A stretch of DNA of 13,531 nucleotides, from NCBI RefSeq assembly GCF_006345805.1, contig NW_021826117.1, forward strand, positions 1 through 13,531, in the 5' to 3' direction. Positions within the stretch are counted from its first letter, which is position 1. Every line of letters begins with the position of its first letter. Shown here in pieces: positions 9,761-10,830 of this stretch. Source of the DNA: Octopus sinensis (Eukaryota). The notes beneath the pieces are model-generated. The model was not told the origin of the DNA and ran no database searches. It was given only the letters and a program-made list of their open reading frames with translations. Made by a program: the position numbers and the translations under genes.

Positions 9761-10128
9761 AAACATGCGTTAAGAAAGAAGGCAGCTTATAGAAAAAAGC
9801 CAAAGTTGATGCCTTCACAACACGTCCCGTGTTTCGTGTCCATCATCACAAACTCTCATGAATGTAGAGCAATGACCAAAAGTGGACGATCGCTAATACA
9901 AGCGACCGTAAATCGGGGTTGCTCAGAAGATGTCTAAAGTAAAGACGTCGGACAGGGTTTGTTCCTCGGATATCAGTAAGTCTCTCCGGATCAAGCTGCA
10001 ACAACTCTGCATTGAAAGATCACATCCTCATTGTAAAGGGTATGTGAAAAGAATGTGATACGAATGATGCAGAGGGCTTCTTCAAACTAAACCACTAGGT
10101 AGGCGACCTAGCAGTAAACCAAACACAT

Positions 10129-10547
10129 ACTTACATACTTGTACTTGTGGCGACATTCACCCTGGGCGAGTTGAGTCAGCTTCTTCTACTCATGGAAGAA
10201 GTTTCGTGGGAATATGTGGATTTCACAAGCGGTCCCCAACAATACCGCATGTGGAAACATCCTGCTTGCCGCAGATTGTCCGCAGACGCAGGGACAGAAC
10301 GACCGAGGAGCCACCGGTTGCCGAAACAGACACTCCGAGGATTTTCACCAGATCCCCGTCTGCCGGGTTGTGCCCCTAATACCACTCAGTGTCAGACCAA
10401 TCCGCCTTGGGTGGCCCTACCGGGAACCGAAGTTCCCGACGGCATAGCTCTGAGACTACCCGTTGCCAGCTTCCCCACCACGGTGAGGAGGGATAGACTT
10501 TGGGGAAGCTTTGGACTTTGGGGACGCGGATGGCCTTTGGGGACGAA
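10129..10547 (-). mobile_element. Non-autonomous, ribozyme-headed retroelement (probably derived from an RTE-clade LINE by internal deletion)
   Basis: GC-rich island. The 3' end on the minus strand is CACAAGTACAAGTATGTAAGT, a short tandem tail. Flanks AAACCAAACACAT (10116-10128) and AAAACAAGCACAT (10548-10560) match 11/13. It has an HDV-like fold at its 5' end, no tRNA head and no recognisable ORF. Confidence 0.65.
10352..10509 (-). ncRNA. HDV-like (double-pseudoknot) self-cleaving ribozyme candidate
   Basis: Hand fold on the minus strand: P1 GCTTCCCC (10509-10502) / GGGGAAGC (10476-10469); P2 ATCCC (10494-10490) / GGGAT (10356-10352); P3 TCC/GGT with one T-T mismatch; L3 TCACCGT; P1.1 CA/TG; GCAAC junction; P4 base CGGG/CCCG enclosing a structured insert; J4/2 G-C-A-G-A with putative catalytic C at 10362. 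Confidence 0.72.
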
Positions 10548-10830
10548 AAAACAAGCACATGATGGATAGTTAATATCCATAATCTCAATTGGTTGCGATT
10601 GGGAATCAATTAGGAAATTGTGAGATGATTCTATGGAGAATGTATGTGGCTGAAAACTACGCCATTCCCAGAAGAGTGGGTGGCAAAAATTGTTGCAAGG
10701 ATATTTCAACTAAATAATGCAAACCAAAACTTTTTCCGATATCGAAAATTTCTGATCTTTATTAATAAATAAATTTTAAATTATAATTATATATTGGCTT
10801 AATGAGATCAATTAAGGTCGGGATAGGCAA

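What the first reader, a model, noticed from the sequence alone, without database searches (positions are those of the whole stretch)
10116..10560. TSD-flanked ~420-bp non-autonomous retroelement headed by a ribozyme rather than a tRNA
Seen: the ribozyme sits at the 5' end of a compact element that has ~220 nt of non-coding 3' sequence, a CAAGTA-CAAGTA-TGTAAGT tail and 11/13-matching flanks. Established: RTE LINEs end in short tandem tails and mobilise internally deleted derivatives; Drosophila R2 SIDEs are ribozyme-bearing short deleted elements. Inference: this may be a SINE-like family that releases its own RNA from read-through transcripts by self-cleavage instead of using a Pol III promoter. 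I do not know of such a family described in octopus. The flank match lies in A-rich sequence, so it could be chance.
Basis: partly seen in the sequence, partly recalled or inferred. Interest (0 to 1): 0.75.

Follow-up and report, generated by a model that had tools for sequence, protein, structure and literature searches.

The report
Possible ribozyme-headed short retroelement, unproven
A 419-bp GC-rich, non-coding insert carries at one end a sequence that can be drawn as a minimal HDV-like self-cleaving ribozyme, but the match is below database thresholds, the flanking repeat is within chance, and no second copy could be looked for, so a ribozyme-driven SINE-like family is plausible but not shown.

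Summary

- **Ribozyme-like motif (10453-10509, minus strand):** it threads onto the HDV-like double pseudoknot without P4. P1 has 8 bp, P2 has 8 of 9 pairs, L3 carries the U...G pair, followed by GG-CAAC. Rfam gives 19.6 bits against a gathering score of 44. My own descriptor hits 3-10% of shuffled windows.
- **Flank match (11/13):** it arises by chance in 2-5% of comparable window pairs, and an equally good match lies nearby.
- **Tail:** it is two copies of an 8-mer of the microsatellite type common in this window.
- **Gap before the cleavage site:** 38 nt lie between the upstream flank repeat and the predicted cleavage site. They are two degenerate in-phase copies of the ribozyme's first 18 nt.
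- **Copies:** only an 80-nt piece recurs in the window, inside a nearby SINE head.

None of the available collections returned anything for this genome. Copy number, shared boundaries, an autonomous partner and empty sites are therefore untested.

My best reading (about 0.4) is an aged minus-strand non-LTR insertion with a 5' minimal HDV-like ribozyme. The main rival (about 0.3) is the 3' end of a plus-strand element ending in 18-nt tandem repeats. If real, it is a new member of a known kind (R2 SIDEs, NARTc).

The parts
10548..10560 (.). Upstream flank repeat (candidate target-site duplication): AAAACAAGCACAT on the plus strand.
   Evidence: Read directly. It matches 10116-10128 at 11/13. Chance is 2-5%, and another 11/13 match lies nearby.
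10510..10547 (-). Two degenerate in-phase copies (18-19 nt each) of the ribozyme's 5' segment (GCKTCCCCAAAG...), lying between the flank repeat and the predicted cleavage site.
   Evidence: TRF gives period 18, 2.8 copies at 10491-10543. The pattern GACTTTGGGGAMGC matches at 10496, 10514 and 10533, against 0.04 expected.
10453..10509 (-). Candidate minimal (P4-less) HDV-like self-cleaving ribozyme, with cleavage predicted 5' of G10509. P1 is 10509-10502 with 10476-10469 (8 bp). P2 is 10499-10491 with 10461-10453 (8 of 9 pairs). P3 is 10488-10487 with 10479-10478. L3 is 10486-10480 (UCACCGU). The P1.1 GG is 10467-10466. J4/2 (CAAC) is 10465-10462.
   Evidence: Rfam RF02682 covers 10443-10509(-) at 19.6 bits against a gathering score of 44. 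E is 0.81 in a 1.5-kb search and 0.098 in a 181-nt search. Helices were enumerated. It is the only hit of my descriptor in the real window. 30 of 300 shuffled windows have a hit, and 8 of 300 have one with P2 of at least 8 pairs.
10391..10452 (-). GC-rich spacer containing a stable GGGAAC-UUCG-GUUCCC hairpin (10437-10422). It overlaps alternative P4-containing threadings of the ribozyme.
   Evidence: MFE folds.
10311..10390 (-). 80-nt module 100% identical to 7545-7624 and 9229-9308 on the plus strand, where it interrupts the tRNA-like head of a SINE.
   Evidence: establish the identity. The flanks are not similar. There is no Rfam hit and no unusual fold.
10149..10310 (-). Non-coding 3' body, with a perfect 7-bp hairpin CTTCTTC-N8-GAAGAAG at 10180-10201, 31 nt from the tail.
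   Evidence: No Pfam or protein homologues in any frame. Hairpin located.
10125..10148 (-). Short tandem tail ACAAGTAC-AAGTATGT-AAGTATGT. Its last ATGT overlaps the downstream flank repeat.
   Evidence: TRF at 10125-10140, period 8, 2 copies. The motif resembles window microsatellites.
10116..10128 (.). Downstream flank repeat: AAACCAAACACAT on the plus strand.

Best explanation
The block 10129-10547 is most likely one aged insertion of a short, non-coding non-LTR-type retroelement lying on the minus strand.

Its RNA would begin with a minimal, P4-less HDV-like ribozyme (nt 1 = G10509). When the element is transcribed as part of a longer host read-through transcript, the ribozyme would cut just 5' of G10509 and define the RNA's 5' end. 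A LINE-encoded reverse transcriptase would then copy the RNA by target-primed reverse transcription. Priming would use the short 3' repeat (AAGTATGT)n, which shares ATGT with the target.

The two extra in-phase copies of the first 18 nt upstream of the cleavage site would be a 5'-junction artefact: repeated template jumps or microhomology priming at the cleaved 5' end.

Shown: the sequence features, the foldability, and the absence of coding capacity and of a Pol III-type head. Inferred: self-cleavage, the orientation, retrotransposition, and above all membership of a multi-copy non-autonomous family, which I rate at only about 0.2-0.25.
For: Ribozyme evidence:
- The sole Rfam match in the region is an HDV-type family aligned end to end from G10509. 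For that one family the E-value scales to about 2e-3 over the whole window.
- All helices of the nested double pseudoknot can be drawn: P1 with 8 bp, P2 with 8 of 9 pairs, and P3 plus L3 with the U...G pair and GG after P1'.
- It is the only hit of a generic descriptor in the real window. 10% of shuffled windows have any hit and 2.7% have one with P2 this good.
- P4-less HDV-like ribozymes are known and active, with the catalytic C first in J4/2 (PMC10879173). R2 ribozymes tolerate absent P4, and their 5' junctions vary when cleavage is at the element's end (PMC3774820).

Geometry:
- The motif sits within 40-50 nt of the only sharp GC boundary and points inward.
- The innermost of the three 18-nt units is the one that pairs best with P1' (plus direct reading).
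- The flank repeat abuts that boundary on one side and a short tandem tail on the other.
- The flanks on both sides have similar GC of about 0.4, as expected for an insertion into one older block.

Content:
- No tRNA, 5S or 7SL similarity.
- No protein similarity in any frame.
Against: - The Rfam score is less than half the gathering score.
- MFE stability equals that of shuffles, with z between -0.4 and +0.2.
- In the canonical register P1.1 has only one of two pairs, P3 has 2 bp, and J4/2 reads CAAC.
- Descriptor controls with the catalytic C changed to A, G or U still hit the locus, so the C requirement is not discriminating.
- The descriptor was written after seeing the sequence.
- The flank match is at chance level for a wider search.
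- 38 nt separate the flank repeat from the cleavage site, which needs an extra assumption.
- There is no sharp compositional boundary at the proposed 3' end.
- The tail is microsatellite-like.
- No second copy is known.
- The assembly shows indel noise: 11 gap openings against 1 mismatch between the two units of the nearby tandem duplication.
Confidence: 0.4

Rival explanations
1. The block is the 3' end of a plus-strand retroelement, either a 5'-truncated LINE 3' UTR or a SINE. It would end in 2.8 tandem copies of an 18-nt unit (GGAYRGMCTTTGGGGAMGC) followed by an A-run (GAAAAAAC). The 8-bp stem would be a 3'-terminal hairpin of the kind reverse transcriptases recognise. The HDV-like reading of the opposite strand would be coincidence.
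For: - The tandem 18-nt units run in phase right up to the sharp boundary at about 10547 and are followed by A6. That is the usual layout of a non-LTR 3' end.
- GC decays gradually toward 10100, as expected for a 5'-truncated copy with no sharp 5' edge.
- The flank repeat begins with AAAA, as for A-tail priming.
- A 156-codon stop-free plus-strand frame spans 10099-10566, p about 0.02.
- The same 11/13 repeat would serve this orientation equally well.
Against: - Given a 7-bp hairpin, the remaining HDV-like features co-occur in only about 1e-4 to 5e-4 of candidates in shuffles: 8-35 hits per 300 windows of roughly 250 hairpins each. This figure is inflated by post hoc design.
- No plus-frame protein similarity to anything.
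- A LINE C-terminal template recalled from memory scored below the shuffled median.
- An 18-nt tail unit is unusually long.
Confidence: 0.3
2. The ribozyme is real, but the compact element is not. 10453-10547 would be the 5' end or 5' UTR fragment of a longer LINE, and the sequence toward 10129 or beyond would be unrelated or rearranged DNA. The tail and flank repeat would be chance.
For: - The flank match and the tail are individually at chance level.
- There is no sharp composition change at 10129-10148, and the GC-elevated block continues to about 9761.
- The 80-nt module shows that local templated copying or rearrangement has occurred in this neighbourhood.
Against: - No reverse-transcriptase or endonuclease remnant lies downstream on the minus strand within 800 nt.
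- LINE insertions are normally truncated at the 5' end, not the 3' end.
Confidence: 0.12
3. There is no discrete mobile element and no ribozyme. The block would be GC-rich debris in a repeat-dense region, in which a hairpin, a short microsatellite and an A-rich 11/13 match happen to line up.
For: - Every single feature has a chance probability of 2-10%.
- Folding energy is ordinary.
- The region is a patchwork of SINEs, LINE pieces, satellites and microsatellites.
Against: The features are mutually coherent in position and orientation, and there is a sharp GC step at about 10550.
Confidence: 0.15

Closest known systems
R2 SIDEs (short internally deleted elements) of Drosophila (PMC3414825)
   Same: Short and non-coding. 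A 5' HDV-like ribozyme is joined to a LINE-type 3' end. They propagate by TPRT using a partner's protein, and their 5' junctions are variable.
   Different: SIDEs are site-specific in rDNA, have a demonstrated autonomous parent and multiple copies, and carry ribozymes shown to cleave. Here there is no parent, no second copy and no activity data, and the insertion is not in rDNA.
NARTc / L1Tc of Trypanosoma cruzi (PMC3185411, PMC3383444, PMC4035085)
   Same: A non-autonomous partner shares with its LINE a 5'-terminal HDV-like ribozyme that defines the RNA 5' end.
   Different: In trypanosomatids the same 77 nt also acts as an internal promoter. The family is abundant and experimentally characterised. 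There is no sequence relationship to this element.
Minimal (P4-less) HDV-like ribozymes, i.e. metagenomic drz and phage theta ribozymes (PMC10879173)
   Same: The architecture of the best threading matches: P1, P2, P3 and P1.1 with no P4, a catalytic C at the first position of J4/2, and a length of about 55-60 nt.
   Different: Those are bacterial or phage-associated and validated in vitro. Here P1.1 and P3 are weak and activity is untested.
[quoted passage not shown]
   Same: The proposed role is the same: releasing the element's RNA from a read-through transcript.
   Different: Those precede an ORF, and there is none here. For RTE-type elements the review also reports truncated twister ribozymes at the 5' end (see also PMC8501958).
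Retrozymes and Schistosoma ribozyme-bearing SINE-like elements (PMC7229834, PMC7761336, PMC8501958)
   Same: Non-autonomous, SINE-like retroelements whose RNA is processed by a self-cleaving ribozyme instead of relying on a Pol III head.
   Different: They use hammerhead or twister motifs, often occur as tandem copies, and go through circular RNA intermediates.

Membership tests
HDV-like (delta-like) self-cleaving ribozymes | Nested double-pseudoknot topology, in the order P1-P2-P3-P1'-P1.1-(P4)-J4/2-P2'. | tested here: met
   The threading from G10509 is P1 1-8/34-41, P2 11-19/49-57 and P3 22-23/31-32, with GG at 43-44.
HDV-like (delta-like) self-cleaving ribozymes | P1 of 6-7 bp starting at the cleavage site, and P2 of at least 5 bp (PMC3774820). 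| tested here: met
   P1 has 8 of 8 pairs. P2 has 8 of 9 pairs including one G-U.
HDV-like (delta-like) self-cleaving ribozymes | L3 with the conserved U and G (reverse wobble) and two nucleotides pairing with GG to form P1.1, plus a 3-bp P3. | tested here: inconclusive
   L3 is UCACCGU, with the U and G present. In the canonical register only C25-G44 pairs, because A26 faces G43. P3 has 2 bp plus a U-U.
HDV-like (delta-like) self-cleaving ribozymes | Catalytic cytosine at the first position of J4/2 (PMC10879173). | tested here: inconclusive
   C45 (or C48) is available. However, descriptor controls with A, G or U at that position still hit the locus through other registers.
HDV-like (delta-like) self-cleaving ribozymes | Score at or above the curated threshold of an Rfam HDV-type model. 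| tested here: not met
   RF02682 gives 19.6 bits against a gathering score of 44. No other HDV-type family hits, even at E up to 10 in a 181-nt search.
HDV-like (delta-like) self-cleaving ribozymes | Compensatory changes in the helices among homologues, and self-cleavage in vitro. | not testable with these tools
   No homologous copy could be obtained.
SINE-like / non-autonomous non-LTR retrotransposon (SIDE type) | Many dispersed copies with the same two ends. | not testable with these tools
   No collection returned anything for sequences of this window. Within the window only 80 nt recur.
SINE-like / non-autonomous non-LTR retrotransposon (SIDE type) | Target-site duplication flanking the insertion. 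| tested here: inconclusive
   The 11/13 match is at the right places, but chance is 2-5% locally and an equal match exists elsewhere in the zone.
SINE-like / non-autonomous non-LTR retrotransposon (SIDE type) | 3' end and tail shared with an autonomous LINE partner. | not testable with these tools
   The LINE fragments in the window (12690-12962 minus strand, 12888-13070 plus strand) show no similarity to the element. No LINE library is available.
SINE-like / non-autonomous non-LTR retrotransposon (SIDE type) | No protein-coding capacity. | tested here: met
   No Pfam family and no homologue for any frame. The 156-codon open plus-strand frame has p about 0.02 and no homologues.
Classical Pol III SINE | 5' head derived from tRNA, 5S or 7SL RNA. 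| tested here: not met
   No such Rfam match, even at E up to 10. ARAGORN finds none. Caveat: ARAGORN also misses the evident SINE heads elsewhere in the window.
RTE-clade derivative | Sequence similarity to an RTE ORF or UTR. | tested here: not met
   No protein similarity. An RTE C-terminal template recalled from memory scored 18.9 bits, below the shuffled median of 19.6. A real RTE library was not available.

The most novel reading that the evidence does not exclude
The block is one copy of a cephalopod SINE-like family with no Pol III head. It would depend on a P4-less HDV-like ribozyme to cut its RNA out of host read-through transcripts, and would be mobilised by an octopus LINE through its (AAGTATGT)n-type 3' end. 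The in-phase 18-nt 5' repeats would record template jumps at the ribozyme-defined 5' end.
Probability: 0.2. Interest if true: 0.55.

Novelty: new member of a known kind. Interest (0 to 1): 0.3.

Why it matters
If confirmed, this would extend ribozyme-defined 5' ends from autonomous LINEs, and from the few known derivatives (R2 SIDEs, NARTc), to a dispersed short element in a cephalopod. I found no paper in the held library that links HDV-like ribozymes with octopus.

It would also place a P4-less HDV-like ribozyme in an animal retroelement.

A recent annotation of Octopus vulgaris lists about 900 SINE families, nearly all unclassified (PMC13282606). A ribozyme-headed class could account for some of them. 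As it stands, the case is a candidate that one genome-wide search and one cleavage assay would settle.

Tried and rejected
1. **Plus-strand LINE ORF remnant.** I suspected that 9790-10250 on the plus strand was a decayed RTE-type ORF C-terminus running through the 'tail'. That would have made the element a mis-oriented LINE 3' end. The test was tblastn with a template recalled from memory. It gave 18.9 bits, below the median of shuffled templates. Pfam (28), two protein searches and a full HMMER scan of 1.8 billion representatives (31/36) found nothing. I dropped this as unsupported. It is not disproved, because the template was from memory.
2. **Spurious ORFs as proxies for nucleotide search.** This included minus-strand frames and the SINE ORF and exact look-up of 10 window ORFs. 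Nothing was returned, so these collections do not cover this genome's non-coding DNA.
3. **Exact DNA pattern scans.** I scanned metagenome, prokaryotic-genome and viral contigs for the ribozyme core and for the 80-nt module. There were no hits.
4. **K-mer searches in the literature.** I searched an octopus transcriptome supplement (only an excerpt is held) and the paper library. There were no hits.
5. **Homology beyond the 80-nt module.** I tested whether similarity between the element and the SINE extends past the module. It does not. The module has no Rfam match and no unusual fold.
6. **Canonical P4-containing threadings of the ribozyme.** One option uses P4 at nt 48-70 with catalytic C72. 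These leave P2 with 4-5 pairs, or place it 6 nt from P3, so I preferred the P4-less threading.
7. **Thermodynamic support.** Z-scores are about 0 on both strands.

Full report
**What is there**

On the minus strand the region reads as follows:
- flank repeat ATGTGCTTGTTTT (10560-10548), then TT;
- two degenerate 18-19-nt units, TCGTCCCCAAAGGCCATCC and GCGTCCCCAAAGTCCAAA (10546-10510);
- GCTTCCCCAAAGTCTATCC..., starting at G10509.

The three units are in phase. The pattern GACTTTGGGGAMGC matches at 10496, 10514 and 10533, against 0.04 expected. TRF reports period 18 and 2.8 copies.

Downstream come a GC-rich spacer, an 80-nt module (10390-10311), and about 160 nt of non-coding sequence with a perfect 7-bp hairpin (10180-10201). 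Then follow the 8-mer tail ACAAGTAC-AAGTATGT-AAGTATGT (10148-10125) and the second flank repeat (10128-10116), which overlaps the last ATGT of the tail.

The interior is 419 bp. GC climbs from 0.41 at about 10100 to 0.62 at 10400-10500 and drops sharply to 0.35 at about 10550.

**The ribozyme**

At gathering thresholds Rfam finds nothing in the window. In E-value mode the only ribozyme match is RF02682 (HDV ribozyme from F. prausnitzii), covering 10443-10509(-) over the full model. It scores 19.6 bits against a gathering score of 44. E is 0.81 for 1.5 kb and 0.098 for 181 nt, in both cases against all 4227 families. For that one family this is about 2e-3 over the whole window. That is notable for a single window and unremarkable at genome scale.

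The aligned core (P1, P3/L3, GGCAAC) is close to the model. The 3' third is not.

Enumerating helices gives a clean P4-less threading:
- P1: 1-8/34-41 (8 bp).
- P2: 11-19/49-57 (8 of 9 pairs).
- P3: 22-23/31-32.
- L3: UCACCGU, with the conserved U and G.
- P1.1: GG at 43-44.
- J4/2: C45-A-A-C48.

P4-less 'minimal' HDV-like ribozymes are known and active, and the catalytic C is the first J4/2 position (PMC10879173). R2 ribozymes can lack P4, need P2 of at least 5 bp, and otherwise conserve few positions (PMC3774820).

Weak points are a single P1.1 pair in the canonical register, a 2-bp P3, and MFE stability no better than shuffles.

I wrote a descriptor after seeing the sequence. It hits the real window once, at this site. 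It hits 30 of 300 block-shuffled windows, and 8 of 300 with P2 of at least 8 pairs. Replacing the catalytic C with A, G or U still gives a hit at the locus.

I therefore rate a genuine, possibly decayed, HDV-like ribozyme at about one in two.

**Boundaries**

The 11/13 flank match is real. It arises in 2% of shuffles and 5% of random window pairs. A wider scan finds an equally good unrelated match.

The tail is a two-copy 8-mer of the (TATG)n type that litters this window. A LINE fragment on the minus strand at 12690-12962 is also followed by a TA/TATG microsatellite.

The coherence of the picture counts in its favour:
- the upstream repeat abuts the only sharp GC step;
- the ribozyme lies 38 nt inside that step and points inward;
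- the tail's ATGT overlaps the target repeat, as in microhomology-assisted priming;
- both outer flanks have similar GC of about 0.4.

Against it, the 38 nt between repeat and cleavage site should not be in a self-cleaved RNA. They must be explained as a 5'-junction product. R2 junctions are variable when cleavage is at the element's end, and R2 reverse transcriptase template-jumps (PMC3774820; PMC3414825).

**Copies**

Within the window only 10311-10390 recurs. It is 100% identical and inverted at 7545-7624 and 9229-9308. Those two sites are the same position in a 1.69-kb tandem duplication (6388-8073 / 8074-9760, 99.3% identity).

There the 80 nt interrupt the tRNA-like head of a SINE between the D-loop-like GGTTAGGG and the B-box-like GGTTTCGATTCC. 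The flanks are unrelated. I read this as a recent local templated insertion copied from the element into the SINE. It is not evidence of a family.

All attempts to reach other genomic copies failed. Even an ordinary SINE ORF from the window found nothing. The negatives therefore reflect coverage, not copy number.

**Orientation rival**

The same block can be read on the plus strand as a retroelement 3' end. It would have an 8-bp terminal hairpin, 2.8 tandem 18-nt units in phase with the end, then GAAAAAAC, and the same flank repeat.

A 156-codon open plus-strand frame (p about 0.02) and the gradual GC decline leftwards fit this reading. My attempt to show a plus-strand LINE ORF remnant failed.

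What favours the minus reading is that, given a hairpin, the remaining HDV-like features co-occur rarely in shuffles. Weighing priors, since most retroelement copies in a genome are 3' ends, I put the minus-strand ribozyme model at about 0.4-0.5 and the plus-strand model at about 0.3.

**Comparison and novelty**

The concept is established. HDV-like ribozymes process the 5' ends of R2 and other LINEs (PMC3774820, PMC7761336). Ribozyme-headed non-autonomous derivatives exist as R2 SIDEs (PMC3414825) and as NARTc (PMC3185411, PMC3383444). Hammerhead and twister analogues exist as well (PMC7229834, PMC8501958).

For RTE-type elements, truncated twister motifs are reported at the 5' end (PMC7761336).

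No paper in the library links HDV-like ribozymes with octopus. If real, this is a new member of a known kind.

**Verdict**

The interpretation cannot be decided with these tools. Interest is modest (0.3), rising to about 0.55 if a multi-copy family and cleavage are shown.

Noticed in passing
6388-8073 and 8074-9760: A 1.69-kb tandem duplication at 99.3% identity, with 1 mismatch but 11 gap openings. This is either a very recent duplication or a long-read assembly artefact. The indel pattern suggests indel errors elsewhere in the window too.
   Followed up: partly
7545-7624 and 9229-9308 (vs 10311-10390): An 80-nt module identical to part of the element sits inside the tRNA-like head of a SINE. 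It replaces roughly 10 nt of the anticodon region, and the flanks are unrelated. It looks like a templated filler insertion copied from 0.7-2.7 kb away in inverted orientation.
   Followed up: partly
12690-12962 (-) and 12888-13070 (+): Two LINE ORF pieces in opposite orientation that overlap. The minus-strand piece is a C-terminus with a CCHH-like motif (...CGTCQRKCLSRIGLHSHSRKC) followed by a (TA)n tail at 12401-12584. The plus-strand piece is RT-like (MLFANDAALVTHTEEA...). Pfam did not score the short pieces.
   Followed up: partly
1308-2738: A 477-bp unit repeated three times in tandem at 90% match (satellite-like).
   Followed up: no
about 6095-6500 (+); about 7040-7400 and 8720-9080 (-): A tRNA-derived SINE with clear A- and B-box-like head, and two adjacent reverse-oriented SINE-like fragments (...GGGTCGATAAATTAAGTACC...) that are about 84-85% identical to each other.
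   Followed up: no
10886-11477, with 10831-10880 and 11112-11161: A long imperfect (CAT)n array. A 50-nt segment just upstream of the array (10831-10880) recurs inside it (11112-11161) at 98% identity.
   Followed up: no
10099-10566 (+): A 156-codon stop-free frame covers the whole element on the plus strand (p about 0.02 against shuffles). It has no homologues and no Pfam match.
   Followed up: yes
10180-10201: A perfect 7-bp inverted repeat CTTCTTC-N8-GAAGAAG lies 31 nt from the 8-mer tail. It could be a 3' recognition stem-loop if the minus-strand model is right.
   Followed up: no
4200-5200: A strongly G-skewed GGT/GTG-rich low-complexity block (GC skew up to 0.69) that produces long spurious ORFs on both strands.
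   Followed up: no
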